64,000 nt of DNA from Ruditapes philippinarum (lineage: Eukaryota): contig NW_026856302.1 of NCBI RefSeq assembly GCF_026571515.1, positions 1 to 64,000 on the forward strand. The letters run 5' to 3'. Shown here piece by piece: positions 1 through 59,829 of this stretch. Within the stretch, counting starts at the first letter, position 1, and each line of letters starts with the position of its first letter. The notes beneath the pieces were generated by a model. That model was given only the letters and a program-made list of their open reading frames with translations. It ran no database searches and was not told where the DNA came from. The position numbers were made by a program, and so were the translations under genes.

Positions 1-212
1 ACAAAGCATGTTAAAAACCCATATATAACAACTCAAACATCAATATACATGTAGTTTTATTGATAGCTCCAACCTTATCCAGAAGTTTCCATGATCAATC
101 AATTTATAAAGTTGACAAAATTTCAAGGAAGATTCTTTTGTGAAATAGTTAAATATATTATTAAATAAATATATGATTGAGATAATTTGATTTTAATTGA
201 ATCTACTTTCAG

Positions 213-260
213 AGTTCAGTACTTGCAGCTTTATATAGTTCTGAAGAATCCGTATTGGAG
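213..260 (+). CDS. PDE2A: PDE2-like phosphodiesterase, H-loop exon copy A (SSVLAALYSSEESVLE); candidate alternative exon
   Basis: tttcAG acceptor at 211-212 and GTgaga donor at 261. The exon is 48 nt, phase 0/0, and 14 of 16 aa are identical to copy B. Confidence 0.75.
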
Positions 261-332
261 GTGAGATTAACCTTTTACCAATCAATCTATTTTTAGACAC
301 ATAGTAATTGTAAGAATTAATCTTTTTTTCAG

Positions 333-380
333 AAATCAGTTCTTGCTGCCTTATATAGTTCCGAAGGATCGGTCTTGGAG
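333..380 (+). CDS. PDE2A: PDE2-like phosphodiesterase, H-loop exon copy B (KSVLAALYSSEGSVLE)
   Basis: ttttcAG acceptor and GTaagg donor. The peptide matches the PDE2A catalytic-domain segment KSVLAALYSSEGSVME that precedes RHH. Upstream exons lie outside the window. Confidence 0.9.
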
Positions 381-1927
381 GTAAGGTGTTTACAAGTGGG
401 CTGAATTTTGCTTGTTTATTTTTTTCTTTCAGATATTTTATTTTATTCTATAATTCCCTGGCCCATTTCTGCCTTTGTCTTAAAGCATATTCACTTACCA
501 TTCCATCATTTTGCAAAGAGATATTTGCTGTGCGGATTTTATTTTTCTTCTGAAGGATTTTTTAATGCAGCTGACATATTTTAATTTCTAAAACTTTTCA
601 GTTTATTGTTTATTTTTACATGTCTTTGAAATGTTATATTTTTGGGCAAAAAAGAATGATTGAACTTTATCAGTCAGCAAATGGAAAATTTGTCATGTAG
701 GGGAGGTAATCAGTATTATAAAATAATGAAACTAACTGGTCCAGTTATGTTTCTTGGCAATTCAATAACATTTTATAATCATCTCAATTGTAAAAATAAC
801 AAATATATGCTTTTTACCATTTTTTATTACTTCATCTTTATTACACGAATTATACTAATTTTAGAATAAAATAAAAACACTAAAATTTCTAATTTATACA
901 AATTTGGTAACAGAGTATTAACATTCTTCTGGGAAAATTACAGTATATTTTTTTAAGAAGTTAAAGTTAAGAAGTTGGTGCTTGTACATATCTTTATGTA
1001 GAGTGGTATTTTAAAATGATTGATTTATTCTCTATATATATTAATTATTTCAATTTTTTTTTATGATTATGGTATCAAATTTATTTTTAAAAAGGCACAA
1101 CATACTTAAACAATTGATAATGTACTGCGTACTACATCAGATATTTCAGAGTTCTTGTTAATTTTTCCTTGTGTTTTACCTGTACAGTGCCCTCCTGCAT
1201 CATCCACAAACACACACATAAATGAATATATTATACTCCTATTTCAGGCCTTGAAGTACTCTTTTAAATTATAATCTACCAACTAAACATTTTGAGGACA
1301 TTTTTTTCATTGATTAAAATATAACATTTTGCAATTTTCTGTTTTCTTTATCTTAATAAAATGTTATTTTTCGTCACTTTATTACAATTCTTTTATCAAA
1401 GCTTAACAGCTATTTTTTGTATTAACTTGTTATTGTTTTTTGAAAACTTTATCTTGTGTGCTAAGCTTGCCGCTGTAAAGTTATTTGTTTTATGATTTGT
1501 TTGTTGCCTAATATTGAGTAAGGTTAGTACAATACTTACATGTTGCTTTTTATAAAAAAAAGTTGCCTTGGCTAATAGGTCAGTGGTTTTATTTGGACAC
1601 TGGCTTGTTACGAAAATGATACATTTTTAGTGTGGTACCGAACATGTGGTCTTCCTTTATGAGCTTTCCAGTGTCAATTTGACTTAAACATAGCTAAAAG
1701 TAAAGAAACTGTTAAAAAGTAATCCACAGATTGTAGTAGGGACTTAAAGATTATTTTTTTTCCATATTTGGTATTAAATTTGATTGAATATGCAGTAATA
1801 ATTTTTTTCTTTTAATTATTTAAATTTTTATTAAATCAGAAAGTTACATGTCAAATATTATTCAAATGATTCATACAGATTAAGGTATCAAACAAAAATC
1901 ATGTTTGATTGTATGCTATTTTAATAT

Positions 1928-2105
1928 TTAACCTGCTGGAACTGCAAGTGATTAGCCTTTGCCTCCAGGAAGACAGGACTGCACATCAGGGTTTATACTG
2001 ATGGCTGACCAACTTAAAATTGTGCTTTTATGCCGTTAAACAGAACCCCCAAAAAACAAAAATTTCAAGCTGAACAAACGCATTTTAGAAATTCAGCAGG
2101 CTAAG
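1928..2105 (+). mobile_element. Short interspersed MITE-like repeat, diverged copy
   Basis: Shares ttaacc..cctgc..ttagcctttgcc..ccag..tatact..ttagaaatt.agcag with the copies at 7662-7863 and 3452-3657 (reverse). Confidence 0.45.
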
Positions 2106-2210
2106 CCAAAAACGGTGTTATAGTGTTATAAATTGTAGTCATTTAGACTAAATATTGTTGTTTTTGCCATATAATGATTTTAAATGTATATGAACATTTG
2201 TGTATTTTAG

Positions 2211-2285
2211 AGACATCATTTTGCACAGACAATGTGTATTCTGAATACAGAGGGCTGCAATGTGTTTGAGAATCTAAACAGCAAG
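2211..2285 (+). CDS. PDE2A: PDE2-like exon RHHFAQTMCILNTEGCNVFENLNSK
   Basis: AG/GT bounded, 75 nt, phase 0/0. It completes the ERHH motif of class I PDEs. Confidence 0.92.
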
Positions 2286-2736: not shown

Positions 2737-2836
2737 GATTACCAACATGTGCTAGATTTGATGAGAGAAATCATTTTGGCCACTGATCTGGCTCATCATT
2801 TTAAAATACTTAAAAATCTTAAAGACTTAGCTGAAA
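2737..2836 (+). CDS. PDE2A: PDE2-like exon [33 protein letters not shown]
   Basis: tttcAG/GTaagt, 100 nt, phase 0/1. Contains the [10 protein letters not shown] motif. Confidence 0.93.
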
Positions 2837-3294
2837 GTAAGTACAATAGTGAACTTGAATTGTGTATTCATTTCCAATTGCTTTATATTGATCAGCCAAC
2901 AGTTTAAGAATCTGGCTCAAAGTGAAGGCTGATTTTACTGTAGGCAATGCCTTATCATCACAGGCAAACAGAGGTTAAAGTAAGCTGAAAGCGTTGTTAC
3001 AGTAAAACTTTGCTGTATACTTTGTTGTTTATTATAACTTAGGCTAGCTAAATCTATGTGACAGTAAAGTCTGTTAACTTGTACATTTATTTGTATATTT
3101 TAAACTCGCCTTTAAATGCAGTGTTAACACTATTAGAGGCGTATGGGGAAGACTGGGCTTGCATAACTATGTTGCCTCTTTATAATTATTATTAAAGTAA
3201 GATGTTTGACAAAAAGATATAAAAGAACAAACAGCTTTAGATAAAGGAAATCATTAGTTGTCATGCATTTTGAAAACAATGACATTTATTTCAG

Positions 3295-3407
3295 GGGGTA
3301 TTGATAAGACCTCAGTGAAGGAAAGAAAGTTACTTCTATGTCTGCTGATGACATCGTGTGATTTGTCGGACCAGACAAGGCCATGGGAAAATACAAAGAG
3401 AGTGGCA
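3295..3407 (+). CDS. PDE2A: PDE2-like exon (R)GIDKTSVKERKLLLCLLMTSCDLSDQTRPWENTKRVA
   Basis: ttcAG/GTatgt, 113 nt, phase 1/0. LLLCLLMTSCDLSDQT is characteristic of PDE2. Confidence 0.93.
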
Positions 3408-3451
3408 GTATGTATATTATCAATGTCTGACAATTCTTATTTGCTATCTCA

Positions 3452-4854: not shown

Positions 4855-5000
4855 GCACTGATTTATAAAGAGTTTTTCTCTCAGGGTGATATGGAGAAAG
4901 CAAAGGGTCTTGAACCAAGTGACATGATGGACAGAGAAAGGGCTCAGATACCTGCCCTGCAAATCAGCTTCCTGGACCATGTTGCTTTACCTGTTTATGT
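4855..5000 (+). CDS. PDE2A: PDE2-like exon [48 protein letters not shown]
   Basis: ttcAG/GTaagt, 146 nt, phase 0/2. Contains EFFSQGD and the invariant purine-binding Gln (LQISF). Confidence 0.93.
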
Positions 5001-5481: not shown

Positions 5482-5698
5482 GTTATTAGGAAAGCTGTTT
5501 AGTCCAGCAAAGGAGGTAGGAGATAGGGTTGAAGAGAACAAGCAGCACTGGATAAAGATCTCTAACTTAATCAAGTTAAAGCGAGGTGGTAGTCAGGCTA
5601 GAATGACCTTTGAGGAAGTGTTGGCCATTGAGAATGAGGCTGATGATGAGACAACCCATCTAGTGAATGGTTCAGAAACCATGGGATCCAAGTGTTAA
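5482..5698 (+). CDS. PDE2A: PDE2-like terminal coding exon (V)LLGKLFSPAKEVGDRVEENKQHW...GSETMGSKC*
   Basis: acAG acceptor whose phase 2 matches the previous donor. The NxxxW motif ends the catalytic domain, and the TAA stop is at 5696-5698. Confidence 0.88.
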
Positions 5699-6396
5699 TT
5701 GAATAAACCAGATACCATGAGATCAAAGTGTAAATTGATTAAACCAGATGCCATGGGATTAAAGTGTTATTTAAATAAACCAGATACCATGGGATCCAAG
5801 TGTTACCTGAATAAACCAGATACCATGGGATCGAAGTGTTAACTGAATAAACAAGATACCATGGGATCTAAGTGTTAACTGAATAAACCAGATACCATGG
5901 GATCGAAGTGTTAACTGAGTAACCAGATACCATGGGATCGAAGTGTTATTTAAATAAACCAGATACCATGGGATCGAAGTGTTATTTGAATAAACCAGAT
6001 ACCATGGGATTGAAGTGTTAATTGAATAAACCAGATACCATGGGATCGAAGTGTTATTTGAATAAACCAGATACCATGGGATCCAAGTGTTATTTGAATA
6101 AACCAGATACCATGGGATTGAAGTGTTAATTGAATAAACCAGATACCATGGGATCCAAGTGTTATTTGAATAAACCAGATACCATGGGATTGAAGTGTTA
6201 ATTGAATAAACCAGATACCATGGGATCGAAGTGTTATTTGAATAAACCAGATACCATGGGATCCAAGTGTTACCTGAATAAACCAGATACCATGGGATCG
6301 AAGTGTTAACTGAATAAACCAGATACCATGGGATCGAAGTGTTAACTGAATAAACAAGATACCATGGGATCGAAGTGTTAATTGAATAAACCAGAT
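5663..6396 (+). repeat. 36-bp minisatellite, about 20 copies, overlapping the PDE2 stop codon and proximal 3' UTR
   Basis: The unit TTGAATAAACCAGATACCATGGGATCGAAGTGTTAA is directly visible. One unit near 5918 has a 1-nt deletion. Confidence 0.97.
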
Positions 6397-13965: not shown

Positions 13966-14079
13966 TGATGACATAAAATCTGACCAGATAGCAGGACCTA
14001 TGAAGATAAAAAGGAGGCATTATCAGTAATATAGCTCAGTTTTTCTTTCATTCCTAAAGTGTGTGTAAAACCTTTCGAA

Positions 14080-16048
14080 ATGATGATTTATTGCATATCG
14101 TTTGTGTGCTTTATTTCACTCACTGCTTTTGGAGAAAAATTACACGAACAACAAAATCTGCAGTCAATTTGGAAAGAGTTGGAGAAATTGAAAGAGATTG
14201 ATCTTCTGAGGGAACGTACATTGGCATTGGAACGTGAGGTTGAGGGATTAAAACTTCAAAATCAAAATCTTAATCAAAAGGTTGAAACGCTGGAAAGACG
14301 ATGTGCGGAGCGCCCTGTAGAGGTAATCATACTGGCTTATCAAAATGTTTTCATTAATTTTCCTAATTTAACTCTATCTGAAACACTTATATAGTTTGTA
14401 TTAAGTACTATTTTACTAGTTTTAACTTTACTTATACATACTAATACCGAAAGATTCCGATTTTAAAGCAGACTTTTAGTGAATGGTGTGGCATATATGG
14501 ACTCTTTGTCATTTCAACGGTGGATCAAAGCTTTTAATCAATGATGACTACCGTTCACGTAGGCCGAAAACCTCGGTTACCAAGGCAAATATTGCTGCTA
14601 AAAAGATTATAGTAGAGTAGGAGTAAAGGATATGTACTGGCATGATATCAGATCAGATGGCAGTATATAATAAGGCTGTTTGCTGTCTTCGGTAAGTTTA
14701 TGACAGTATTTTATGTTTTGATGTTTTACTGGAAACACCTAGTGAGACGGGAGCATTAAAAAATTAAAATATTAAATAAAATTCAGTCATAAACTTACCG
14801 ACAACAGAAAACTGGCAGATTTTATTCACCGCTCCTCCGACGAATTCTCCACCGCCGCTTCTGCGAAAGATAAGGCCAGTGTGTATATTCTTGCATACGC
14901 AGTTTGCATGCAAGTATCCTCACTGGTTTTTGTTTTATATCAACAAAATGTCCGAAACAGTATGTTTTGTCATTAAATCATGAATATAACTTTTCCTCCA
15001 TATAAAAAATCTTTTAATTAAATAGTTTGCATTCGTATTTAGATGTGACTGTATAAATTTTCAGGATGTTGAAAGGACAGAAAAAACTGGTACGATGGCC
15101 AACACGACAAACACTCACAGCTATTCTTTCAACCAGACATTTGAATCAAGGAAACAAACTTCTAAACTAAATCGCCAGAGAAGTATATTACCAAGTAAAC
15201 ATAATTATTAAAATCCCCATGTCTTATTCGGCTACATGCATGGCAAGAACGCAGTAGATCACTACATTTGCAACCGACAGTAGTGGAAATTGAAGGAACT
15301 CAAGACTACATACTATTCAGTTTGTCTTTGTAAAGTCTGTGGATCTGGAATATACACTCGAATGTTTTCTTCGCCTATATCATCTTTTTTATGACGTGGG
15401 GCGTTATCTGTGACATGGGCGCGTATTATATAACCATTCCCTCTACCCAAATGAAGAATGAGCGTGAAATATAATATATTTGACATTAATTAGATACTAT
15501 ATTTTAATATATATGTGATGCTGCAATAGCTGATTATGATATGACAAATCTCTTTCTCTATAAACTATTGGTCTGTTTGTTTACATGTTCAGATTGTCCA
15601 CCAATTGAATCGTTTTCTATTTTCAGGACAGGTCTCAATCCAAACACATATAGCGTTTACAGCAGGAGTATCGGTTGATAATCTTCATAATTTAGGTGAA
15701 CATCAATCTATTATATTTGATCGTGTCATCACAAACATTGGCAATGCTTACCGTCCACATACTGGGATTTTTAATGTCCCGGTTAAAGGTGCATATGCTA
15801 TAACGCTAACCATGACTGTTGAACCTAACAAACTTCAAAGGCTTGAGTTAGTTGTTGACGGCGGTTCAACATACTATATATCTGCTGGCCAAGCGGATGC
15901 TAGAGACTACACTTCTACAACAAAACAATGGATTCTAGAGCTGCATACCGCATCAGAAGTATGGGTCAGGAAGGTTGGTGCTGCCTACACTGACCTCCAC
16001 GGAAATATGGATACTATTATATCTGGCTATCTTTTGTTCCAGACATAA
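14080..16048 (+). CDS. C1qDC gene 1: secreted coiled-coil plus gC1q protein, 264 aa, intact
   Basis: Exons 14080-14322 (signal peptide MMIYCISFVCFISLTAFG and heptads), 15065-15194 (S/T-rich linker) and 15627-16048 (AFTA..IIFDRVITNIGNAY..TGIF.VPVKGAY..SGYLL). Introns are GT-AG with phases 0 and 1. AATAAA follows at 16062. Confidence 0.92.
14672..14868. mobile_element. Inverted-repeat (hairpin) element in intron 1 of gene 1
   Basis: Arms tcggtaagtttatgac and gtcataaacttaccga. Related copies lie at about 31640-31852 and about 60617-60785 (reverse). Confidence 0.65.
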
Positions 16049-18906
16049 CAATTTTCTGCGAAATAAAGTTATTCAACTGTGAGTTTTGTAGGTGAAAAAT
16101 ATAAGCAAAAATAACATGTTTTCTGATGCCGCTCTGTAACTTTTAGAAATAGTATAAGACGTTCCGGCTATATGTTTATATAATAAACTGTGTATGTATT
16201 ATCTAATTAGTATGATACCTCCGTTTATTTCAAAAAAATACTTCATACATGTATAATTATGATCTTTTTATCAAACTTAAAATTTTTGAACTTAAAGTAA
16301 ACATCATTTAAAATCATTTTTTTTCTAAAAAGCAGATGTTTGGCATATGTAGCATCACACTATAGCCCTTATAACAGCAGAATTGTCCCTTTTGTTCAAA
16401 TTATGCACTTACGGGGAGAATTGCTAGTAAGGTAATGAAATAACCAATAAATTGTAACCGAAGAATATCGATTTTTGATTAAATTTTCGCTTTTCAAGTA
16501 CTGACATAATTACTAGGTTTCCATAACATTTTATCATTCAAAAACAAACATGTACAATGTTGATAAATGTACAATTTTACCTACGAATAATAAATGATTG
16601 AAATGTTAGTGATTGTATTATCTCATTGACTGAATGATCATAAAATAATGTTGTTTTTTTTTTCAAAATTTTTATTACCGATTCTTCGTTGTACTGTCCA
16701 CATTGTAATGTGCTTCTTTTGGCACTAACTGAGAATCTACTTGTCATCTGACATCTTCTGAATTATTGTAAAAGTTACAAAATTATATGATATAAGGTTA
16801 TATTTTGACGTTTTTAATGAGTGTTTACATTATTATAATGTTTAATATACCATTAACCATTATGATCTTTATATTAAGTCTGGTGCAATAAGTTATATTT
16901 CTACGTGAAAAGGTCTATCATTTATCCGTGTTTGGCACTCAGGACAAAGTATTATATATCATGATCCTGTTTAGATAGAAATCTCGAAATTTGTCGATCT
17001 GCCTAGCCTTTATCTGCTGTATAAAAAAACTCTACCATTCAATCTTTAGTTCTCAATGATGTGTTCAAATATGTACACATTTGTGATGATTTGACACATG
17101 CGTGTGCAAAACATCTGGTGAAGTGTTTGCGTGTAACTTTATGATATGATTACCACTGAAGTTATTCAATTTGATCTTCACTTATACTTTTGCGATTCTT
17201 ACATACGGTATATTCTCGACTCTTGTTTAATTTGAAATTTCTTGTGAAAGTTTTGCGTGCAAGTTTTTTTCAACGAATTCACTTTCAATGAAGTAATGCA
17301 TATAAAATGATTATACTCTATAATTCTGTTTTCTCTGCCATATATAAAAATTTCCTCAAAATGTTAGCTACATTAAAGAGATAATTAAATTTTGGATGAT
17401 CAGAGGTTCAATTATTTCTAAACCAATGTATTGTCCTCTCGAAATAAAGCAGGGTCAAATGCAATTCTACAGAATTCGCATGGTGAGTTTTTTTTAGTCT
17501 TTGTTTATGAAATTAAAAAAAATACTATTAAATAATTTATTTCATATACTATAAGTAATGTATATGGGATATAACAGTCTTCTCATAAAAGTTACTGGAA
17601 GTGACGATATTAAACGTCACGAAAAAGTCCTAAAGCAATAAAAAAACCCAGTATATTTGAGATCTTTGGACAAACGAATTAAATGGCAGATATGTTATTC
17701 CTACTAACACAACATTTTATCGTAACTATTTAATATCAATTTTATTCTTGCTTTTCTGAATTATTTCTTCGTTTTCTATAAGTACATAATGCTCCCCATC
17801 CAATCGGACAATTCCATATGTTTTATTTTTTCAAACAATCATCGTATAGTTTATTTAAAGGTCAAATTATCCGGTCAGTTATAGCCCGTTTCAAAAACAA
17901 AGCAAAAAACGTATTGTTGTTAATTTTTGTAGGTTACGACAATCAGTCTCTCAAAAGCCGACATGATGTGTGTACACGTCTTTCAGTTATTGACTCTGAG
18001 GGATATTAAAAATAAATGATAATTCGACATCAATGATATTTAACCTCTAACAACTGTACTAAGGTATTATTAATCCGTTATAGTTAAAGTTATAATTTTT
18101 CTCTACACAAAATGAGTGTTTTGATGTTCTTTCTCTTTCGTACCATAGGCAAAAATATAACACGTTCCCAGCCGTCACAATATTAAACCCCAGAAAAAAA
18201 TAACCAATGTACACAAGTATCTGAATATGACTTTATACATCGTTATCTCTTTCCCCGTCGTCGCATGAAAAAAATATAGCCAGTCAACACAGACAGTGAG
18301 TGCAGTAACAAATACCTGCCCTCAGTTTACGCACTGTGCATGCATCGTATACGATTTAACTGTGACACGTTTTCAATAGTAATTAAAGTCTCCAAACTGT
18401 GATACAAGTGAATGTTTATTTCTAAAAAAATACAAACTACCAAATACAGACCTTTTAATGGTAAAAATCTTCCTTCATGCACCAAACATACATGTTCTTT
18501 CTATTCCATATCATTGAAAACTAACGAGCCAGCTACTGAGCAATTTTAGTTATGTTTATGAAACTAAAATAATTGCCGCTCGAAAATATGTTGATATTGA
18601 AAATATGCCGTTCTCGAAAAAAACATTAATCTCATTTAATCTTAATAGGTACAAAGTAACACGAACATTGTAAGAAATAAAGGATTTTAGAGCAATTTCG
18701 TAGCATACACACAAAGAAGCAGTTGATTATGATACAGTTAAAACAAATGATATTATAAACATAAGAATACATAAGAAGTTTAATTATTATACGGTATTGT
18801 TATATAGCTTAAAATTAAATAGTGTAACTTGTCAAAAAGAGCAATTTCACTTGAATGTTTGTTTCATGTGACGTACAACACATATTCACACACAAAAACC
18901 GTTTAA

Positions 18907-30580: not shown

Positions 30581-31043
30581 TGCATGGGCATGATTCCTTC
30601 CTAGTTATGAACCGACTTAAAATAGCTGAGATGCACCAACGCCTTACTGATAGATCTTGTACTCCTATCTTTTTTAGTGACACACGATCATGTTATATTT
30701 AATTTTGTAATACACATTTTAATAAGGTTTTAAAATTAACAAGTTTGAAAATACCTTTTTTCCCATTTGTTATATATATTTTTATGTGTTGATTAAGGAA
30801 CCCAATATAACAAAATACTATATCTAGAGTTTGTATTTCTGAATATTATATAGATGTATAACAAGTTAATTGTTTCCGCCCTTAATATTTTTTTTATAGT
30901 TTTACAACAAGACTTCTTATCATGATAATGTTGACACGGTATGTAAAATCTGACAAGATAGCAGGGTCTATTAAGATGAGGTATTATCAGTAATATAGCT
31001 CAGTTTTTCTTTCATTTCTAAAGTGTGTGTAAGACCTCTCGAA

Positions 31044-33007
31044 ATGATGATTTATTGCATATCGTTTGTATGCTTTATTTCACTCACTGCTTTTGGAGAA
31101 AAATTACACGAACAACAAAATCTGCAGTCAATTTGGAAAGAGTTGGAAAAATTGAAAGAGATTGATTTTCTGAAAGAACGTACACTGGCATTGGAAAATG
31201 AGGTTAAGGGATTAAAACTTCAAAATTACAACCTTAACCAAAAGGTTGAAACACTGGAAAGACGATGTGCGGAACACTCTGTAGTGGTAATAATACTGGC
31301 TTATCAAAATGTTTACATTAATTCTCCTAATTTAACTCTATCTGAAACACTTATATATATTTTTGCATTAAGTACTATTTTACTAGTTTGAACTATACTT
31401 ATACACAGACACATGCCGAAAGATTACGATTTTAACGCGGATTTATAGTGAATAATGCGGCATATATTGACCTCTTGTCATTTCAAAGGGCAAATCCTTA
31501 GTTGGATCAAAGCTTTTAATCAAAGATGACTACCGTTCACGTAGGCCGAAAACTTCGGTTACCAAGGCAAATATTATAAAGATTATAGTAGAGCAGGAGT
31601 AAAAGAGATGTACTGGCATATCAGACGGCAGTATATAATATGGCCGTGTTCTGTCGTCGGTAAGTTTATGACTGAGTTTTACTTTATGCATATGTGGGCT
31701 GCCGTCGCACTAGGTGTTCCCAGCAAAACATAAAAACTTAAAGTAAAATTCAGTCATTAACTTACCAACAAAAGCAAACGGGAAGCTTTTATCCACCGCT
31801 TCTGTGACGAATTCTCCACCGCCGCTGCGGTAAATCCACTACTTCTGCGAAAGCTATATCTGCATGCAAGAATATTTGTTTACCGGTATCCACACTGATT
31901 TTTGTTTCATATAAACAAAATGTCAAGAACAGTAGCCTATGTGTTGTCATTAAATTATTAAATTATGAATATAGCGTTTCCTCCATATTCTATTTAATGA
32001 AAATCTTTTAATTAAATAGTGTTTGCAATCGTATTTAAATTTGACAGAATAAATTTTCAGGATGTCGAAAGGACAGGAAAAACTGACACGACGGCCAACA
32101 CGGCAAACAATCACAGCTATTCTTTCAACCAGACATTTGAATCAAGGAAACGAACTTCTAAACTAAATCGCCAGAAAAGTATACTACCAAGTAAATATTT
32201 AATCCCCATGTCTTATTCGGCTACAGTACATGCATGGCAAGAACGCAGTAGATCACTACATTTGCAACCGACAGTAGTGTAAAGTGAAGGGACTCCAGAC
32301 TAAATAATGGTTCCGGATGTTTCTTTCGCCTTGGGCGTTATCTGTGACTGGGCGCGCGTTATCTAACCATTCCCTTTACCCGACTGAAGAAAGAGCGTGA
32401 AATATTATGTATTTGACAACATAAATTATATAATATATTTCAATATACTCGTATATGTGACGCTTCAGTTGCTGATTATGGTATGGTAAATCTCTTTCTC
32501 TATAAATTATTGGTCTGTTTGTTTACACGTTCAGATTGTCCCCCAACCCTGTAATTGAATCGCTTTCTATTTTCAGGACAGGTCTCAATCCAAACACATA
32601 TAGCGTTTACAGCAGGCGTATCGGTTGGAAATCTTCATAATTTAGGTATTCATCAAGCTATTATATTTGATCGTGTCATCACAAACATTGGCAATGCTTA
32701 CCATCCACATACTGGGACTTTTATTGTCCCGGTTAAAGGCGTTTTATGATTTAACGTTAAACCATGGACTTTGTTGAAAACCTACCAAATTCAATGTGCT
32801 TTGAGTTGTTTGTGACGGCGGTTCCCACATACTATTAGGTGTGGCCTAGCGAGACTTGGCGGACTACGCTTTACAACAGAACAATGGATCCTAGAGTTGG
32901 GCAACTGGTCCCCGGTGTGGGTAGGAAGGAGGTAGTTCTGCCTGACCTCTGACCTCAACGGAATATTGAATATATTATTCGGCGTAATTCTCTTGTTCCA
33001 GACGTAA
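31044..33007 (+). CDS. C1qDC gene 3 (paralog of gene 1); frame broken in 32741-33000, either a pseudogene or a sequencing error
   Basis: Exons 31044-31286 and 32061-32190 are intact. Exon 3 (32577-33007) is clean up to about 32740 and then has dense 1-2 nt indels. Confidence 0.7.
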
Positions 33008-36000
33008 CAATTTTTGGAAAGGAAAGTTATTTAACTGTGATGTTTGTGTGTGAAAAATATAAGCAAAAATAACATATTTTCTGATGCCGATCTGTTGTTT
33101 GTTTACTTTTAGAGATATTATAAGACGATCCGGCTATATGTTTATATAGTAAACTGTGTATGTATTAGCTAATTTGTATGATACCTCCGCTTAAATCTAA
33201 AAATAGAATACTTCATTCATGTATAATTATGTATAATTATGATCTTTTTATCAAACTTCAAAATTTTGATGTTATAGTAAACATGTCTTAAAAGTCTTTT
33301 CTTCTAAAACCTACAAAGTACAAGCAGATGTTTGGCATCACGGATATAAATCCGTGTTGGCATGTAGCATCACTATATTGCCTTTATAATGGTAGAATTG
33401 TCACTTTTGTACAAATCATGTACTTATTAGTGTATGGAGGGTAATTAAAAAGCAATTAATTGTAACCGAAAAATATAATTTTTTGATTATTTTTTATCAT
33501 TCAAAAACAAACATGTACAATGTATATACAAAAAAAACCCAACAAATTTACCTAAGAATACTAAATGATTGAAATGTTAGTGATTGTATTATCTGATTGA
33601 CTGAATGATCATAAAATAATGTACCTTTTTTCAAAATTTCTATTACCGATTCTTCGGTGTACTGTCCACATTGTAATATTTCTTTTGGCACTAACTGAGA
33701 ATCTACTAGTTATCTGATATCTTCTGAATTATTGTTAAAGTTGCATATATGATATAAGGTTATATTTTGACGTCTTTAATGAGTTGTAACGTTATTATAA
33801 TGTTTAATATACCATTAACCATTATGAGCTTTATATTAAGTCTGGTGCAATAAGTTATATTTCTAAGTGAAAAAGTCTATCATTTATACGTTTTTGACAC
33901 TCCGGACAACTTAAGTATTATATACCATGATCCTGTTGAGATAGAAATCTCGAAATTTGTCGATCTGCCTAGCCTTTATCTGCTGTATAAAAATTTATTC
34001 TATTATTCAATCTTTAGTTCTCAATGATGTGTTTAAATATGTAAACATTTGTGATGATTTGACACATGCGTGTGCAAAACATCTGGTGAATGTTTTGCGT
34101 GTAACTTTATGATAAGATAACCACTGAAGTTATTCAATTTGATCTTCACTTATACCATTGCGATTCTTACATACCGTATATTCTCGACTCTTTTGTTAAA
34201 CTTGAAATTTCTTGTGAAAGTTTTACATGCAAGTTATTTCTTTTCAACGAATTCACTTTTAATGAAGTAATGCATATAAAATGATTATACTCTATTATTC
34301 TGTTTTCTCTGCCATATATATAAATTTTCTCAAAAATGTTAGATACCTTAAAGAGATAATTAAATTTTGGATGATTAGAGGTTCAATTATTTCAAAACCA
34401 ATGTTTTGTCCACTCGAAATAAAGCAGGGTCAAATGCAAATTCTAAAAAATCGCATGGTGAGTTATTTGAGTCTTTGTTTATGAAATTAAAAAAAATACT
34501 ATTAAATTATTTAATAATTTATTTCATATACTATAAGTAATGTATATGGGATATAACAGTCTTCTCATAAAAGTTACTGGAAGTGACGATATTAAACGTC
34601 ACGAAAAAGTCCTAAAGCAATAAAAAAAAAACCAGTATATTTGAGATCTTTGGACAAACGAATTAAATGGCAGATATGTTATTCCTACTAATCCAACATT
34701 TTATCGTAACTATATAATATCAATTTTATTCTTGCTTTTCTAAATCATTTCTTCGTTTTCTATAAGTACATAATGCTCCCCATCCAATCGGACAATTCCA
34801 TATGTTTTATTTTTTCAAACAATCATCGTATAGTTTATTTAAAGGTCAAATTATTCGGTCAGTTATAGCCCGTTTCAAAAACAAAGCAAAAAACGTATTG
34901 TTGCTAATTTGTGTATGTTACGACAATCAGTCTGTCAAAAGCCGACATGATGTGTGTACACGTCTTTCAGTTATTGACTTTGAGGGATATTAAAAATGAA
35001 TGATAATTCGACATCAATGACATTTAACCTCTTACAACTGTACTAAGGTATTATTAATCCGTTATAGTTAAAGTTATAGTTTTTCTCTACACAAAATGAA
35101 TGTTTTGATGTTCTTAAAACACGTTTCCAGCCGTCACAATATTAAACTCCAGAAAAAGATAACCAATGTACACAAGTATCTGAATATGACTTTATAGATC
35201 GTTATCTCTTTCCCTGTCGTCGCATGAAAAAAATGAGCCAATCAACAGAGACAGTGAGTGCAGTAACAAATACTTACCCTCAGTTTACGCACTGTGCATG
35301 CATTGTATACGATTTAACTGTAACACGTTTTCAATGTTTATTTCTAACAAGAAGTACTACCTACCAAATACAGACCTTTAAACGGTAAAAATCTTCGTTC
35401 ATGCACCATACATGCATGTTCTTTATATTCCATATCCTTGAAAACTAACGCACCAGCTACTGAGCAACTTTATTTATATTTATAAAATGACTTCTAAAAA
35501 CTAAAATAATCGTGTGAGATTTTATTGCACTCGAAAATATGCCGATTATAAAAGTATGCCGTTCTCAATATTAAGCCACTAATCTCATTTAATCTTAATA
35601 TACACATAAAAATAACACGAACATATTAAGAAATAAAGGAAAACAATTTAAGAGTTTTAGAGTAATTACATAACATACATACAAATAAGCAGTTGGTTAT
35701 GATATAGTTTAAAGCTAATGATATAACAAACATACTACAGGGTTACGGCAAGAAGTTCATTTATTATACGGATTTTTTATCTTTCTTTAAATAAAAGAGC
35801 CATTTGACTTGAACTTTGTTTCATGCTATGTAAATACACACAAACTGGCATATAAACAAATAAGTTGTTGATAGGTTTCTGGTCTGTCGACCTCATTGAC
35901 TAGTTTATTTATTATTACGGAAGAACAATAAGAATAATACGAAACGGTCTGCGATGTTTCAATCTTTCTTTTAGGAGACCACCAATAATTTCAAGAGTTA

Positions 36001-52329: not shown

Positions 52330-53970
52330 ATGATGATTTATTGCATATCGTTTGTGTGCTTTATTTCACTCATTGCTTTTGGAGAAAAAATAAAAGAACA
52401 ACAAAATCTGCAGTCAATTTGGAAAGAGATTGATTTTCTGAAAGAACGTACACTGGCATTGGAAAGTGAGGTTAAGGGATTAAAACTTCAAAATGACTAC
52501 CTTAAACAAAAGGTTGAAACGCTTGAAAGACAATGCGCGGAACACTCTGTAGAGGTAATCATACTGGCTTATCAAAATTTTTACATTAATTTTTCTAACT
52601 TAACTCTATCTGAAACACTTATATAGTTTTGAATTTAGTACTATTACTTGAAGGTCCGTTGAAAAAGGCAATTTTCCATTAGTACATAAAATCATTATAC
52701 GGAGATCATTCGAAAAGATATTCCATTAATAGGTTTCTAAAGTTTTATCCTCATAGTATTTAAAACGTTTTATTGCAATATAATGAGGTGTTCAATAGCT
52801 AACTACAACACCTTGTTTCATGCCATTTGCATATAAAATAACAGATATTTTAATATGAAATACATAGGTCATATAAATGGGCAAGTTTGAAGGTACAAAA
52901 TCTTATTGACACACTCTCCATATTCTATTTAATGAAAATCTTTTGATTAAATAGTGTTTGTATGCGTATTTAATTTTGACTCAGCACTTATAATTGTATA
53001 AATTTTCAGGATGTCGAAAGGACAGAAAAAACTGACACAACGGCCAACACGTCAAACAATCACAGCTATTCTTTCAAACAGACATTTGAATCAAGGAAAC
53101 GAACTTCTAAACTAAATCGCCAGAGAAGTATACTACCAAGTAAATATAATTACGTAAATCCCCATGTCTTATTCGGCTACAGTACATGCATGGCAATAAC
53201 GCAGTAGATGACACATTTGCAACCGACAGTAGTGTAAAATGAAGGAACTCCAGACTAAATAGTGGTTTTGGAAATACAATCGGATGTTTCTTTCGCCTAT
53301 ATCATCTTTTTTGTGACTTGGGCGTTATCTGTGACAATGGCGCGCGTTTTCTAACCATTCCATATACCGGTACCTAATTGAAAAAAGAACGTGAAATATA
53401 ATATATGACGTATTTTAATTAGAATATAGTTTTTAATATATATGTGATGCTACAATAGCTGACATGACAAATCCCTTTCTCTATAAATGATTTGTCTGCT
53501 TACACGTTCAGATTGTCCACCAATTGAATCGTTTTCTATTTTCAGGACAGGTCTCAATCCAAACCCATGTAGCTTTTACAGCAGGAGTATCGGTTGATAA
53601 TCTTCATAATTTAGGTGATCATCAAGCTATTATATTTGATCGTGTCATCACAAATATTGGCAATGCTTACCATCCACACACTGGGATTTTTAATGTCCCG
53701 GTTAAAGGCGCATATGCTATAACGCTAACCATGACTGTTGAACCTGACAAATTTCAATGGCTTGAGTTAGTTGTTGACGGTGGTTCAACATACTATATAT
53801 CTGCTGGCCATGCGGGTGCTAGGGACTTCGCTTCTACAACACAATAATGGATCATAGATCTGCAAACCGGATCAGAAGTGTGGGTCAGGAAGATTGGTTG
53901 GTATGGCCAATCTGATCTCCACGGAAATATGAACACTATTATATCCGGCCATCTATTGTTTCAGACGTAA
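52330..53970 (+). pseudogene. C1qDC gene 9 with a single premature stop (CAA to TAA at 53845-53847)
   Basis: Exons 52330-52554, 53010-53139 and 53546-53970 are otherwise intact. The equivalent codon is CAA in the near-identical exon at 41128. Confidence 0.85.
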
Positions 53971-55005
53971 GAATTTCCGAAAAGTAAAGTTATCAAATTG
54001 TGATTTTTGTGTATGAAAAATATAAGCAAAATAAAATCTTTCTGATGCCGATCTGTGGTTTTATCTTACAGGAAGACGAACTTTGCAATAGACTGAAATA
54101 ATTTTGACAAATTGCTTACTGTAGCGAAAAGCATTGCAATGGAATAATGGCTAAATATAAGCTGATGTACTTGTATGTGTGATTACGTCATAAATTTATA
54201 TGATTAATTTCAAAATTATTGTTTAACGCAATAAACCATTTTTCTTAATTCTGGTACGAATTTAAAATTTATTGAACAGTATAAATTGAATGACTATTAC
54301 ATCTTTTTATTTGTTATGGCCATATTAATTATAAACTGTTAACTTTTATAGCTTGTTTCTTTATTTACCAGGATTAATCGGAGAATAGCAGGCCCATTCT
54401 CCTGTGGTTGAATAACATTTGGCTAAGGGTTTGCCTGCAACGTTTTATTTAAAAAATTACATACCTTAGTCAAAATTAAATGATTAAGTTTGATTGAATT
54501 TGACCGTAATTAAACTCAGAAGCGTTCTTGTGTTCAGACTATTAAACAACGTCAAATATAACTGAAGGATAATAAGACGAATATTCAGTCAAACTGACAG
54601 ATCTAAGTATCTAATGGTATCTGGCATATTAGTATGTTTTTTTTTTCAATTTCGTAACACACATATTTAGAAAGAGAGAATCAAATTGTTAATTTTTAAA
54701 ATAAAAACATTAAAATTCATGGTTTACCTATGTACCTAAGAAGCAATCTTTTGTGAAATAGAACAAAACTTTTATACGAAATCTAAATCTTTTTAAATTC
54801 TTAATATATAGATAAATAGCAAGTCCATTCATTTCATGCTTTTACAAATGTTTCACAATTTTTGACCCAACTTGTAGACACCAAAACTTCTTATCATGAA
54901 AATGGTAACACATCAAAGTTAAACATGACAGCAGATCCTTTTAAAGGAATCATTATCAGTTATACCTCACGTCCATTTTTTTCTAAATTGTCTTAGCTTT
55001 TCGAG

Positions 55006-58000
55006 ATGGTGATTTCTTACATACTGTTTGTATGTTTCATTTCAAAAACTGTGTTTGGAGAAGAATTACACGAACATAAAAATATGCAGTCGATTTTGAA
55101 TGAGTTGGATTCGATGAAAAAAATGCTTCAACATAATAGTGAAAAGTTGATAGAGATTGATTATCTGAGGGAACGTACACTGGCATTGGAAAATGAGGTT
55201 GAGGGATTAAAACATGAAAATCACAATCTTAATCAAAAGGTTAAAACGCTGGAAAGACTATATGCGGATCGTTCTGTAGAGGTAATCATACTGGCTTATC
55301 AAATTCACATTGTTTTTTTCAAATTCAATTCTATCTGAAATACTTACATAGTTTTTAAAGTACTATTTACTAGTTTGACTCATACTAATGTAAGACATAC
55401 TTAAAGATTACGATTAAAGTCATTAAATTAAAGCAGAGCATGGCCGGATGCATAACTTTTAAATCATTTTAATAGAACATAAATATATTTCAAGCTCAAT
55501 TGAAAAAGGCAATTTTCCATTAGTATATAAAATCATTATACGGAGATCATTGAATAAGCTATGTCACTAAAATGTTTCTGTAGTTTACATGTGTTTTATC
55601 CTCATAGTATTTTGAAACGCTTCATTATACTTGAAAAGCTAACTATAACAGTTTCTTTCATGCAATTTGCGTGTTAAATGACCGAGATGTTTTAACTGTC
55701 ATCGACTTTGATCAATTTATATAATTATATATATTATACAATGGATAACAAAACTAAAATCAAAACTACATTAAATGTCGCATTAGAATTAATATACATG
55801 CAACGCAGATTTATTATCAAATGGGTGGCATATATGGACTTTGGGTCATTGCAAAGCGCAAATCTTTATGCGGGTGAAAACATTTTAAGCCTGGCAATTG
55901 TCTGGCAAAGATAAATACCATTCCGGTAGGCCTATGTTACCAAGGCAATTGGTTCTATTAAAGTTATAGTTGTGCAGGAGTAAAGGAGATGTACTGGCAT
56001 ATCAGAAAACAGTATTCATTTAATTAATTTAAAATCAAGTGTTTGGGTTTTTAAGACAGGTTTGTGCCAGGTGGGTACCCATTTAATCATTAAGCTACAA
56101 TAGAAACAGCGTTTTCAGTGTGTCAAGTAACTTCTAAAAACATACAAAGACTGTGATAGTCAAGTTGTTTCTATCTTGCAGATAGGTGATAAAACTTGGG
56201 TTGATATGTTAAAGCTTCAAAAGTGCCTTGATGATGCAGTAGACAGAGTTGCCGCTTCAGTGTTGTATTCATGCAATAACATACTCTATTCATATTTCTT
56301 TCTATAAAATTGCAAATTTTAGGTATTTTTTTCTTATTTGACCGGTTTTGTTTCAAGAAGTTACAAATGCGTGAGAATATTTTTGTACACGACTTGATTC
56401 CAATGATCATACATTCGACAGAAAGGTGAGAAACAATTACATAGAGGATATTTGTTTGTTTGTGTGTAAGATGAAATTTTATTTCATCGAGTGAGCTTTA
56501 AAAACAGTATTCTCAAGAGTGGAGTAGCCACGAGTTAGAATATTGTTTTTAAAGTTCACGAGATGAAATAAAATTACATCTTACACAACAAACAAACACA
56601 TTTTCCTTTTATTTTATGCTTAAAAACAAGTTAAAACAAAATTTCCTTGATAGTAACATAAATATTAAAATTTGTTTTCCCAACTGGTAGCCTCTATTAT
56701 GTACATGTTTTGTCGAATTTCTCATATTAAATGTAAACGGCCGCCATTTTTAAGAATTGTGTATTTCAGGAAAATAATTGTGTTTGATTCAGAGGGTTAT
56801 CATTTGGATTTGTTAGTCATACACCTTTTTAAAAGAAAGAAAACTTATTTGAGGATTGTAACAGACAATAAATAAGTGTTAACAAATTTGTAAACATAAA
56901 AAACGGCTAGGAAATTGGAAACTTGGATTTGTTGAAAGGCTGCCTTATGGACGCTGTGTTGTTTACTTATTCTTTGGGCTGATGGCTGTCATTGCTTTTC
57001 AAGTTTTCATAGAGCATACGGCAGTTATTCCTCGTAGGATACTTAAATATGCCCAAATGTTATCAAGAACAGTTTTGCATGTAGAAGGAATGTATTTTTC
57101 AGACTGTATAAATGAAACAAAAAAATAGATATTTGGTGATTGGTAATTTGGATGAATAGAAGTAAGTTTTCTTCTTGTTATTACTTTTGACATTTAAATT
57201 ATTTATCAATTTCAGCTTTGCTTTTGTCTAAACACCCTGACATTGTCAAAATTGTCAGCAAAAATAAAATTGAGGTACCACATGGGGAAAATCTTAAAAA
57301 AGTAGTATCGTTATTGAAACGTGTGAAATTATATATTGATAATTTTCACTATGAAATTATCAAATATAATTTCCACGGATAAATCAGTAATCCACTGAAA
57401 AGCATAAAATAATCCATCATAATAACATGACAGAGCGTAAGATTCGAACTTATGAGTGCAAATCAGTAAAAGTTACAGTGACGTTGATTTACCAACTGAG
57501 CCGCTACGATGGTACACAGTCGTACATGTATTAGAATTAAACCATATGTCTTATTCGAATTAAACTATTCAGAGTTGTGACACGTCCAATCTCGGATAAT
57601 ATGTAGTCTTACCTTGTACCGTTAAGACCAAATTATTATCCCAGGACAATAAGAACCTAGCTAGAAACCAGTGTGTAGGCTCCTGTACGGTAAAAATATT
57701 TGGAATATTTCTCCTAAAAGAAGAAACATAAGTTCTGTTTTAAGTCCATTTCTGTATAATTTTTCAGAATGTTGAAAGGACCGAAAAAACTGACACGACG
57801 GCCAACAGGGCAAACAATCACAGCTGTTCTTTCAAACAGAAATTTGAATCAAGGAAACGAACTTTTAAACCAAATCGCCAGAGAAGTATACTACAAAGTA
57901 AATACTATTAGTAAATCCCCATATCTTATTCCATGTATTCGGCTACATGCATGGCAAGAACGCAGTAGATGACTACATTTGCAACCGACAGTAGTGTAAA

Positions 58001-58744
58001 GTGAAGGAACTCCAGACTAAATAGTGGTTCTGGAATATACACTCAGATGTTTCTTTCGTCTATGTTATCTTTTTTGTGACGTGGGCGTTATCTGTGACAG
58101 TGGCGCGCGTTATCAAACCATTCTCTCTACCTAACTGAAAAAAGAGCGTGAAATATAATATATAAGGTATTTTAATTAGAATATATATTTTTATATTATA
58201 TATATATGTGATGCTACAACACCTGGTTATAACATGACACATCCCTTTCTCTATAAATTATCTGTCTGTTTGTTTGCACGTTCAGATTGTTCACCAATTG
58301 ACTCGTTTTCTATTTTCAGGACAGGTCTCAATCCAAACCCATGTAGCTTTTACAGCAGGAGTATCGATTCCAAATCTACACAATTTAGGTGTTCATCAAA
58401 CTATCGTATTTGATTATGTCATCACAAACATCGGCAATGCATACCATCAACATACTGGGATTTTTAATGTCCCGGTTAAAGGCGCTTATGCTATAACGCT
58501 AACCATGACTATTGAACCAGACAAATTTCAATGGCTTGAGTTAGTTGTTGACGGTAGTTCCACATACGATATAGGTGCTGGCCAAGCGGACGCTAGGGAC
58601 TACGCTTCTACAACACATCAATGGATCCTAGAGCTGCAAACCGGATCAGAAGTTTGGGTCAGGAAGATTGGTAGTTCTGGCCAATCTGACCTCCACGGAA
58701 ATATGCATACTATTATATCTGGCCATCTATTGTTCCAGACGTAA
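55006..58744 (+). CDS. C1qDC gene 10, 276 aa, intact
   Basis: Exons 55006-55281, 57768-57897 and 58320-58744 with an open frame. Intron 1 is expanded by TE insertions. Confidence 0.9.
56442..57413 (-). mobile_element. Inverted, internally deleted copy of the 28482-29653 hairpin element
   Basis: tagaggatatttgtttg... through ...ccactgaaaagcataaaataat matches the reverse complement of the other copy. Confidence 0.85.
57435..57507 (-). mobile_element. tRNA-like SINE head remnant
   Basis: The reverse strand has an A-box (ggctcagttgg) and a B-box (gttcgaatc), but I could not fold a full cloverleaf. Confidence 0.35.
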
Positions 58745-59829
58745 CAATTTCCGAAAAGTAAAGTATCAAATTGTGATTTTTCTGTATGAAAAATATAAGC
58801 AAAAATAAAATCTTTCTGATCTGTTGTTTACAGGAAGACGAACTTTGCAATAGACTGAAATAATATTGACAAATAGCTTACTGAAGCGAAAATCATTGCA
58901 ATGAATTATGGCTAAATATATGATGATGTACTTGTATGTGTGATTACGTCATTAATATGATTAAGTTCAAAAGGCGTAATTTCATATTATTGTTTAACGC
59001 AATTAACCATTTTTCTTAATTCTGGTACGAAAGTATGTTATTTAAAATTTATTGAACAGTATGAATTGAATGACTATTATTAGTACATTTCTTTATTTGT
59101 TATGGCCATATTAATAATAAACTGTTAAACTTATATAGCATATATTATTTCTTTATTTACCAGGATTATTCGGAGAATCGCAGGTCCATTCTCCTGTGGT
59201 TGAATAACATTTGGCTAAGGTTTTGTCTGCAACGTTTTATTTAAAAAAATACGTACCTTAGTTAAGATTAAAACATAAAGTTTGATTGAAATTTACCGTT
59301 ATTAAACTCAGAAACGTTCTTGTGTTCAGACTATTAAACATAGTCAAATATAACTGAAGGATATGGGATGATTATAATAAGATGAACATTCAGTCAAACT
59401 GACAGATCTAAGTATCTTATAGTATCTGGCACATTAGTATGTTTTTTTTTTCAATTTCGTAACACACATATTTAGAAAGAGAGAATCAAATCGTTAAATC
59501 AAAACATTTACATTCATGCTTTACATACGTACTAAAGAAGCCATCTTTTGTGCAATAAAACAAAACTTTTTTACGAAATCTAATATTTTTTAAATTCTGA
59601 ACATACAGATAAATACATGTATCAAGCTCATTAATTATTTGCATGCTTATACAAATTTTACAAATGTTTCACAATTTTTGACCCAACTTGTAGACACCAA
59701 AACTTCTTATCATTAAAATGGTAACACATCAAAATTAAACATGACAGCAGATCCTTTTTAAGGAATCATTATCAGTAATGCGTCACGTTCATTTTTCTTT
59801 TCATTCCTAAATTGTGTTAACTTTTCGAG

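What the first reader, a model, noticed from the sequence alone, without database searches (positions are those of the whole stretch)
213..380. Tandemly duplicated, apparently selected H-loop exon in PDE2: candidate mutually exclusive splicing of the allosteric switch
Seen: two 48-nt phase-0 exons only 72 nt apart, both with good AG/GT sites, encode SSVLAALYSSEESVLE and KSVLAALYSSEGSVLE. Six of the 8 four-fold degenerate third positions differ and the flanking introns no longer align, yet only 2 of 16 residues changed and there are no indels. That pattern suggests an old duplication with purifying selection on both copies. Established: this segment is the distal H-loop between HDLDHRG and ERHH, which in mammalian PDE2A occludes the active site until cGMP binds GAF-B. 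Inference: the very short intron may block joining of A to B, giving two isoforms that differ by K/S and G/E and may differ in basal activity or cGMP activation. The ORF track does not show this feature.
Basis: partly seen in the sequence, partly recalled or inferred. Interest (0 to 1): 0.8.

Follow-up and report, generated by a model that had tools for sequence, protein, structure and literature searches.

The report
Clam PDE2 either/or H-loop exon
The Manila clam's PDE2 gene (a cGMP-regulated enzyme that breaks down cyclic nucleotides) has two old tandem copies of a 48-base exon for the loop that gates its active site; RNA shows mRNAs with one copy or the other, so this is a real either/or splice switch of a familiar type whose functional effect is untested.

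Summary
Exons A (213-260) and B (333-380) are 48 nt, phase 0, AG/GT-flanked and 72 nt apart. They are 39/48 nt identical and differ at 2 of 16 residues, while 6 of 8 four-fold sites differ (dN/dS about 0.1, p=0.004).

The genome is Ruditapes philippinarum. The window's contig starts 212 nt before exon A, so the upstream exon was read from the collinear second copy, C1762.

RNA contigs give the key result. One run joins upstream exon>A>next exon and another joins upstream exon>B>next exon. Each is at the depth of that run's constitutive junctions, with exact GT..AG cuts. No A>B junction was seen.

Between the two genomic copies exon A is 48/48 identical, while flanking introns differ by 8-13%.

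The exon matches human PDE2A K712-E727, the distal part of the H-loop (G702-S724). Exon A replaces a Gly (human G723) that was G in every PDE2 orthologue from the two full-length searches and in a 30-sequence alignment; only one distant fragment has Ser there.

RefSeq annotates only B. No A-type protein exists in the databases searched.

The proposed steric block is not supported. The scan found similar exon pairs in other genes of this genome. Verdict: a new member of a known kind, at an interesting site.

The parts
167..212 (+). Conserved end of the upstream intron with the exon A acceptor (weak pyrimidine tract, AG at 211-212)
   Evidence: In the alignment shown, the last difference between the two genomic copies before exon A lies near window 160-163 and 167-212 is identical. 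The whole interval 1-212 differs by 10%. Read.
213..260 (+). Exon A, 48 nt, phase 0, SSVLAALYSSEESVLE. This is the alternative copy. It puts Glu in place of a Gly that is otherwise almost invariant (human G723)
   Evidence: In run X2, spliced contigs join upstream exon>A (L006 230>1993, depth 42) and A>next exon (2040>4402, depth 19). 48/48 identical on C1762. Not annotated in RefSeq models P0203 and P0295.
261..332 (+). 72-nt intron between A and B. Donor GTGAGA, candidate branch site TTAAT at 317-321, tract TCTTTTTTTCAG
   Evidence: Only 2/72 differences between the genomic copies against 8-13% in flanking introns. No A>B junction in any of 4 runs. No special RNA fold (z = -0.47).
333..380 (+). 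Exon B, 48 nt, phase 0, KSVLAALYSSEGSVLE. This is the canonical copy, identical to the sequence in the scallop, ark-shell and Dreissena orthologues, and it has the stronger splice sites
   Evidence: In run X1, spliced contigs join upstream exon>B (230>2113) and B>next exon (2160>4402), both at depth 26.5. Used in RefSeq XP_060579444.1 (P0203). One synonymous difference on C1762.
381..2210 (+). Intron between exon B and the next constitutive exon
   Evidence: Junctions. 8-13% divergence between the genomic copies, with many indels.
2211..2285 (+). Constitutive exon (RHHFAQTMCILNTEGCNVFENLNSK) that accepts both A and B
2737..2836 (+). Next PDE2 catalytic exon ([33 protein letters not shown].)
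   Evidence: The junction was mapped to the window.
3295..3407 (+). PDE2 catalytic exon (GIDKTS...CDLSDQTRPWENTKRVA)
   Evidence: donor GTATGT at 3408.
4855..5000 (+). PDE2 catalytic exon ([12 protein letters not shown]...LPVY)
   Evidence: Used as the query.
5482..5698 (+). Last coding exon of PDE2, up to the stop codon. Its end lies in the first unit of a 36-nt tandem repeat
   Evidence: Identical to the C-terminus of P0203 and P0295.

Best explanation
Exons A and B are a mutually exclusive exon pair that arose by an old tandem duplication of the 48-nt exon for the distal H-loop of the clam's PDE2. Each mRNA joins the upstream HDIDHRG exon to either A or B, and then to the RHHF exon. B is the ancestral, default form: it has the canonical sequence and the stronger pyrimidine tract and donor. 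A is a regulated alternative that becomes the main form in some samples. The two enzymes differ at two positions. One is a Lys/Ser position that varies among species. The other is Gly to Glu at a Gly that is almost invariant in PDE2 (human G723). In a predicted model both positions fall in the two non-helical hinges of the distal H-loop. The inferred consequence is a change in how readily the H-loop moves off the substrate pocket, and so in basal activity and/or the size of cGMP stimulation. Shown: the duplication, selection on both copies, and use of each exon with the same neighbours. Inferred: strict exclusivity, regulation by tissue or state, and any enzymatic effect.
For: Run X2 has contigs with joints 230>1993 (depth 42.3) and 2040>4402 (18.7), against its constitutive joints at 39 and 55. 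Run X1 has 230>2113 and 2160>4402 (both 26.5), against its constitutive joints at 29.4. All cuts are GT..AG. There is no A>B joint and no skip-both joint. X1 and X2 come from different studies. Constraint comes: exon A 0/48 differences, A-B intron 2/72 and exon B 1/48 (synonymous), against 8-13% in flanking introns. C1762 is collinear with the window for at least 16 kb. Position: the exon equals human K712-E727 and the H-loop is G702-S724 (PMC13095499). The Gly is invariant in a 30-sequence alignment spanning cnidarians to mammals and is G in all proteins inspected. The AF2 model of the B form (mean pLDDT 86.6) has short helices at 89-95 and 99-103 and a long helix from 109. The K/S position (96) and the G/E position (107) lie in the coils between them, and this segment has the lowest internal confidence (pLDDT 61-69), as expected for a mobile loop. 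Context: RefSeq isoforms of other bivalves already alternate homologous exons elsewhere in PDE2, namely the GAF-B-to-catalytic linker exon and, in one oyster, the HD exon.
Against: Each isoform rests on contigs from one run only, and those runs are only guessed to be RNA, although the spliced joints imply cDNA. The two raw-read RNA runs had under 1x depth here and showed no junctions. Contigs drop rare variants, so the absence of A>B or skip-both forms is weak evidence. No A-type protein was found in three large protein searches or among the cluster members for Dreissena and Mya. RefSeq annotates only B. No mechanism that enforces exclusivity was found: both exons are 3n long so NMD cannot police them, the splice sites are ordinary GT-AG, and there is no selector/docking pairing. 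A Gly-to-Glu change at a near-invariant residue could also mean an impaired product rather than a tuned one.
Confidence: 0.75

Rival explanations
1. Exon A is a tolerated splice variant with no function of its own. The duplicate is sometimes chosen by the spliceosome, but the A protein is neutral, or is a low-activity by-product.
For: Only one run shows A. RefSeq and all database proteins are B-type. A has weaker splice signals. A carries Glu at a near-invariant Gly, which could simply damage the enzyme.
Against: Four-fold sites are saturated, yet only 2 of 16 residues differ (dN/dS about 0.1, p = 0.004). Exon A is 48/48 identical between copies whose flanking introns differ by about 10%.
Confidence: 0.13
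2. The difference between runs is genetic, not regulated. Individuals or populations carry haplotypes in which only A or only B is usable, so each animal expresses one form.
For: X1 and X2 each show only one form. The species is highly polymorphic: the two assembled copies differ by 8-13% in the flanking introns and carry many indels.
Against: Both assembled genomic copies carry both exons with intact AG/GT sites and nearly identical sequence. X2 also has unspliced, low-depth contigs running into exon A and out of exon B that match the reference (table 8, records 10 and 11).
Confidence: 0.05
3. A is an optional cassette added in front of a constitutive B. This would give a 16-residue H-loop insertion rather than an either/or choice.
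For: Both exons are 3n long, so A+B stays in frame. The 72-nt intron looks spliceable, with a branch site about 59 nt from the donor. RefSeq does place the two linker-exon copies in tandem in clam P0203 and in several Mya isoforms.
Against: X2 has a contig that joins A directly to the RHHF exon and skips B. No A>B joint appears in any of 4 runs. A duplicated helix-hinge segment next to the metal site would probably not fit the fold (inference).
Confidence: 0.04

Closest known systems
Mutually exclusive exon pairs made by tandem exon duplication (e.g. U2AF1 exons 3/Ab, OGDH 4a/4b, CaV1.2 8/8a, C. elegans let-2 9/10; PMC5224494, PMC7969005, PMC3060452, PMC4165533, PMC5740500)
   Same: Two adjacent homologous exons of equal length and phase, each with its own splice sites. 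Both are spliced to the same neighbours. They differ by a few residues in a functional element. The duplication is old and both copies are constrained.
   Different: No enforcing mechanism could be identified here. The length is 3n, so NMD cannot act. The intron is not clearly too short. The introns are not U12-type, and no competing RNA pairing was found. Exclusivity itself is shown only by assembled contigs from two runs.
Other alternative homologous exons in bivalve PDE2, present in RefSeq isoform sets (oyster X1/X2, Dreissena, Mya linker exon; Crassostrea angulata isoform X3 HD exon)
   Same: The same gene, the same style of tandem homologous exons, and the same functional neighbourhood: the helix linking GAF-B to the catalytic domain, and the H-loop.
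   Different: Those clusters affect the 26-residue linker exon (human S551-K576) or the exon just upstream (HD motif plus proximal H-loop). The distal H-loop pair described here is not annotated in any species examined, including the clam's own RefSeq models.
Mammalian PDE2A splice variants (PDE2A1/2/3)
   Same: One gene giving several enzymes by alternative splicing.
   Different: From my own knowledge, the mammalian variants differ only at the N-terminus, which sets localisation, and share one catalytic domain. Here the variation lies inside the catalytic domain, in the gating loop.

Membership tests
Mutually exclusive exon (MXE) cluster from tandem exon duplication | Adjacent homologous exons of the same length and reading phase | tested here: met
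   48 nt each, phase 0, 39/48 nt and 14/16 aa identical, 72 nt apart.
Mutually exclusive exon (MXE) cluster from tandem exon duplication | Each exon is spliced to the same upstream and downstream constitutive exons in RNA | tested here: met
   X2 has 230>1993 and 2040>4402, X1 has 230>2113 and 2160>4402, all GT..AG. This is one run per isoform.
Mutually exclusive exon (MXE) cluster from tandem exon duplication | The exons are not joined to each other and are not both skipped | tested here: inconclusive
   No A>B joint and no 230>4402 joint in 4 runs. However, contigs drop rare forms and the raw-read runs had under 1x depth at this gene.
Mutually exclusive exon (MXE) cluster from tandem exon duplication | A recognisable mechanism enforcing exclusivity (steric block, U2/U12 incompatibility, competing RNA pairing, or NMD of wrong products) | tested here: not met
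   Exon lengths are 3n. Both introns are GT-AG. The candidate branch site is about 59 nt from A's donor in a 72-nt intron (thresholds from PMC5740500 and PMC4165533). Inverted repeats are only AT-rich low-complexity matches. Fold z = -0.47. This is not a strict requirement of the class, since many accepted MXEs lack a known mechanism.
Mutually exclusive exon (MXE) cluster from tandem exon duplication | The pair is conserved in related species | not testable with these tools
No eukaryote genome collection is available. Metagenome scans gave nothing for the A type. They gave one bivalve contig that starts 16 nt before its B-type exon. Dreissena and Mya RefSeq isoforms are all B-type, which says nothing about their introns.
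PDE2 (GAF-A/GAF-B cGMP-stimulated dual-substrate phosphodiesterase) | GAF domains followed by a class I PDE catalytic domain, with closest solved relatives being PDE2A | tested here: met
   RefSeq model P0203 on C1762 carries PF13185/PF01590 (GAF) and PF00233. The window's exons are identical to its C-terminal part. [quoted passage not shown]
PDE2 (GAF-A/GAF-B cGMP-stimulated dual-substrate phosphodiesterase) | Metal-binding HD motif and a PDE2-type H-loop sequence | tested here: met
   HDIDHRGTNNSFQTAS in the upstream exon. Exon B is identical to the scallop, ark-shell and Dreissena sequence and differs from human by one residue.
PDE2 (GAF-A/GAF-B cGMP-stimulated dual-substrate phosphodiesterase) | Activation of hydrolysis by cGMP binding to GAF-B | not testable with these tools
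   This needs an enzyme assay.

The most novel reading that the evidence does not exclude
Bivalve PDE2 may use either/or exons at each element of its allosteric relay: the GAF-B-to-catalytic linker helix, the proximal H-loop/HD exon in oysters, and the distal H-loop in the clam. In the clam, exon A's Gly-to-Glu change at the near-invariant C-terminal hinge of the H-loop could convert a cGMP-gated enzyme into one whose gate is biased open or shut. That would be a splice-encoded choice between cGMP-stimulated and cGMP-insensitive PDE2 from a single gene.
Probability: 0.2. Interest if true: 0.7.

Novelty: new member of a known kind. Interest (0 to 1): 0.5.

Why it matters
How cGMP binding at GAF-B opens the PDE2 active site is still described as a hypothesis that awaits confirmation (PMC13095499). 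The clam offers a natural, selected two-residue variant of the gating loop, one residue of which is a Gly conserved from cnidarians to mammals. Comparing the two isoforms would test directly whether that hinge controls basal occlusion and cGMP activation. The case also shows that automatic annotation of this clam misses a used exon. Together with the linker-exon clusters in other bivalves, it suggests that alternative exons have repeatedly targeted the regulatory path of this enzyme. As a phenomenon it is ordinary: mutually exclusive exons are well known, and this scan has found several in the same genome.

Tried and rejected
A metagenome scan for an A-type exon found nothing. A scan for a B-type exon with Leu found one bivalve contig (L007) that begins 16 nt before the exon, so it is uninformative.

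(2) I looked for A-type proteins with three homologous-protein searches: scallop P0007 catalytic region, clam P0203 catalytic region, and an unchanged 232-residue part of P0203 meant to catch short transcript fragments. I also checked cluster members for Mya and Dreissena. All were B-type, and the database holds no clam RNA-derived fragments.

(3) The raw-read RNA runs X21 and X23 had under 1x depth at the gene and gave no junctions.

(4) RNA-structure control of the choice: the inverted repeats are AT-rich chance matches, and the fold of 165-395 is no better than shuffles.

(5) Steric block: rejected as unsupported (see the report).

(6) A distal branch site, TTAAC at 267-271 just after A's donor, was considered as an OGDH or tropomyosin-like mechanism (PMC7969005). 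I rejected it because three AG dinucleotides lie between it and B's acceptor.

(7) Further exon copies: none.

(8) Pandit et al. 2009 is not held. The H-loop limits were taken from PMC13095499 and the numbering.

(9) I did not build, search or fold a joined exon-A isoform. Only database proteins and single exons were used.

Full report
WHAT IS THERE

Reading the window confirms the finding letter for letter.
- Exon A is 213-260, with AG at 211-212 and donor GTGAGA. It encodes SSVLAALYSSEESVLE.
- Exon B is 333-380, with AG at 331-332 and donor GTAAGG. It encodes KSVLAALYSSEGSVLE.
- The two are separated by a 72-nt intron (261-332).
- The next exon (RHHFAQ...) is 2211-2285.

The repeat finder lists the pair as one 59-nt direct repeat, 83% identical, whose similarity ends just outside the splice sites. 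A Nei-Gojobori count gives 6 synonymous differences on 11.7 sites and 3 non-synonymous on 36.3 sites. That is dS about 0.87, dN about 0.087, Fisher p = 0.004. Six of the eight four-fold sites differ. Gene conversion cannot explain the protein similarity, because it would also have homogenised the silent sites. A scan of the gene found no third copy.

WHERE IT IS

The window is contig C4789:1-64000 of a 1.4-Gb assembly. The contig begins only 212 nt before exon A, so the upstream PDE2 exons are not in the window. A second contig, C1762, carries the same region at about 90% identity and stays collinear for at least 16 kb. It is either the other haplotype or a very recent duplicate.

The RefSeq protein XP_060579444.1 of Ruditapes philippinarum (P0203) sits on a 182,230-nt contig, which is the length of C1762. 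Its C-terminus is identical to the window's exons. The organism is therefore the Manila clam, and the gene is its PDE2 orthologue. The model carries GAF and PDEase domains. The Dreissena orthologue matches human PDE2A structures at E about 1e-272.

On C1762 the upstream exon (...CHDIDHRGTNNSFQTAS) ends in phase 0 about 1.76 kb before exon A. P0203 uses exon B only. A 209-residue partial model on the window's own contig (P0295) starts inside the RHHF exon. Neither exon A nor exon B is annotated there.

IS EXON A USED?

That stretch holds the upstream exon, A, B and three downstream exons. Two contig runs and two raw-read RNA runs were laid on it.
- Run X2 has one contig joining the upstream exon to exon A (230>1993, depth 42.3). 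It has another joining A to the RHHF exon (2040>4402, depth 18.7).
- Run X1, from a different study, has the upstream exon joined to B (230>2113) and B joined to the RHHF exon (2160>4402). Both are at depth 26.5.
- All four cuts are exact GT..AG at the predicted boundaries.
- These depths equal those of the same runs' constitutive junctions: 39 and 55 in X2, and 29.4 in X1. A therefore looks like the main form in X2 and B the main form in X1.
- No run shows an A>B junction or a junction that skips both exons.

Limits of this evidence:
- There is one run per isoform.
- The two runs are only guessed to be RNA, although spliced contigs imply cDNA.
- Contigs drop rare variants.
- The raw-read runs X21 and X23 had under 1x depth here and gave no junctions.

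CONSTRAINT

Aligning the window with C1762 gives these difference counts:

| Segment | Differences |
|---|---|
| Exon A | 0/48 |
| A-B intron | 2/72 |
| Exon B | 1/48 (synonymous) |
| Upstream 212 nt | 10% |
| Downstream introns | 8-13%, with many indels |

The aligned block shown has only those 3 substitutions between about 167 and 391. This makes a conserved island around both exons and the short intron. At 10% divergence, zero differences in 48 nt has a probability of about 0.006 (my calculation). Both copies, and probably their splicing signals, are therefore under selection.

WHAT THE EXON ENCODES

In the alignment to full-length human PDE2A (9lrn), the exon corresponds to K712-E727. The H-loop is G702-S724 (PMC13095499). 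It occludes the substrate site in the unliganded enzyme and swings out on activation or inhibitor binding (PMC7590001, PMC6392808). The review notes that the link to cGMP binding still awaits confirmation.

The two differences between A and B are unequal.
- Position 1 (K in B, S in A) varies among species: K, Q, E, S, G and others are seen.
- Position 12 is Gly in every protein inspected from the two full-length searches. It is invariant in a 30-sequence alignment spanning cnidarians, echinoderms, molluscs and vertebrates. Only one distant database fragment has Ser there. Exon A has Glu.

An AlphaFold2 model of the B-form catalytic domain was built from an unchanged part of P0203 with 29 homologues (mean pLDDT 86.6).
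- It places two short helices at model residues 89-95 and 99-103, and a long helix from residue 109.
- The K/S site (96) and the G/E site (107) lie in the two coils between these helices.
- This stretch has the lowest internal confidence (pLDDT 61-69), as expected for a mobile element.

The inference is that A and B differ in hinge flexibility of the distal H-loop, and so in basal occlusion and/or cGMP activation. This is not shown. A Glu at that Gly could equally cripple the enzyme.

HOW THE CHOICE IS MADE

B has the better signals (TCTTTTTTTCAG, GTAAGG) and A the weaker ones (CTACTTTCAG, GTGAGA). This fits B as the default and A as a regulated exon.

- Three AGs lie inside the intron.
- The only good branch motif within the AG-free zone before B is TTAAT at 317-321.
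- That is about 59 nt from A's donor, above the <50-nt criterion used for human MXEs (PMC5740500).
- The 72-nt intron is well above the ~40-nt limit in C. elegans (PMC4165533).

Other known mechanisms also fail to apply.
- Both exons are multiples of three, so NMD cannot remove double inclusion.
- The sites are ordinary GT-AG.
- Inverted repeats in the surrounding introns are AT-rich chance matches.
- The region folds no better than shuffles (z = -0.47).

The enforcing mechanism is therefore unknown. The tight conservation of the whole 72-nt intron suggests that protein-binding elements lie there (inference).

RELATIVES

Three large protein searches and one cluster look-up found no A-type PDE2 in any species. 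All Dreissena and Mya RefSeq isoforms are B-type.

This does not show that the exon is absent from their genomes. The only metagenome hit is a bivalve contig that starts 16 nt before its B-type exon.

The same searches showed that bivalve PDE2 genes carry other alternative homologous exons.
- A 26-residue exon for the helix between GAF-B and the catalytic domain (human S551-K576) alternates in oysters, Dreissena and Mya. It exists in two copies in the clam, where RefSeq strings both into P0203.
- One Crassostrea angulata isoform swaps the HD exon immediately upstream of ours.

Earlier notes of this scan report several other mutually exclusive exon pairs in this genome. The phenomenon is common in this species.

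VERDICT

It is a new, unannotated member of a well-known class. Its interest comes from its position in the PDE2 gate and from the change at a near-invariant glycine. Strict exclusivity, regulation, conservation beyond this species and functional effect all remain open. No contig that I took for human was met.

Noticed in passing
L003 about 908-985 and about 2932-3009 (= G000:C1762 about 85.5 kb and 87.6 kb): The same PDE2 gene has two tandem homologous 78-nt exons for the helix linking GAF-B to the catalytic domain (SLMYKKVIDSQVRNSLANELMMYHMK and SLMYKKLLDTQHRKSLANELMIYHMQ; human S551-K576). RefSeq model P0203 strings both together. In oysters and Dreissena the isoforms seen use one or another. 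Mya has three variants, and several of its isoforms include two.
   Followed up: partly
Proteins P0192 vs P0180 (Crassostrea angulata isoforms X3 vs X1), residues 677-703: One oyster isoform swaps the exon just upstream of ours (HD metal motif plus proximal H-loop). It differs at 6 residues, including C>S and C>G next to the HD motif. This is a second alternative exon in the H-loop region, in a different bivalve lineage.
   Followed up: no
window 5673-6396: A 36-nt tandem repeat with 20 copies, 91% matching. The PDE2 stop codon and the last residues (..TMGSKC) lie in its first unit, and each unit carries an in-frame stop.
   Followed up: partly
window 14000-16100, 30970-33058, 52935-54021, 57752-58794; also C1762 110-123 kb: A tandem family of related genes (75-85% DNA identity). 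One exon at 15545-16045 looks by eye like a C1q-type globular domain. This was not tested against Pfam.
   Followed up: no
Protein P0266 (Mya arenaria GenBank model): This gene model skips the 16-residue H-loop exon altogether (..NNHFQTAA directly followed by RHHF). It is probably a micro-exon missed by the predictor, not evidence of a skip-both isoform.
   Followed up: no
L006 2353-2744, 4117-4312, 5685-5851 (introns of C1762): Very high depth in all four runs (up to about 1,500), with many variant letters and loose ends. These look like expressed repeated elements inside PDE2 introns. Part of the first lies in a segment absent from the window's copy.
   Followed up: no
L007 (metagenome contig Ga0224510_10048279, 2279 nt): An environmental metagenome contig carries four exons of a bivalve PDE2 that most resembles Mya's. 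It breaks 16 nt upstream of the H-loop exon.
   Followed up: partly
window 2211-2285 vs L006 4402-4476: The constitutive RHHF exon has 3/75 differences between the two genomic copies. That is more than exon A (0/48) or exon B (1/48). I did not check whether the differences are synonymous.
   Followed up: no
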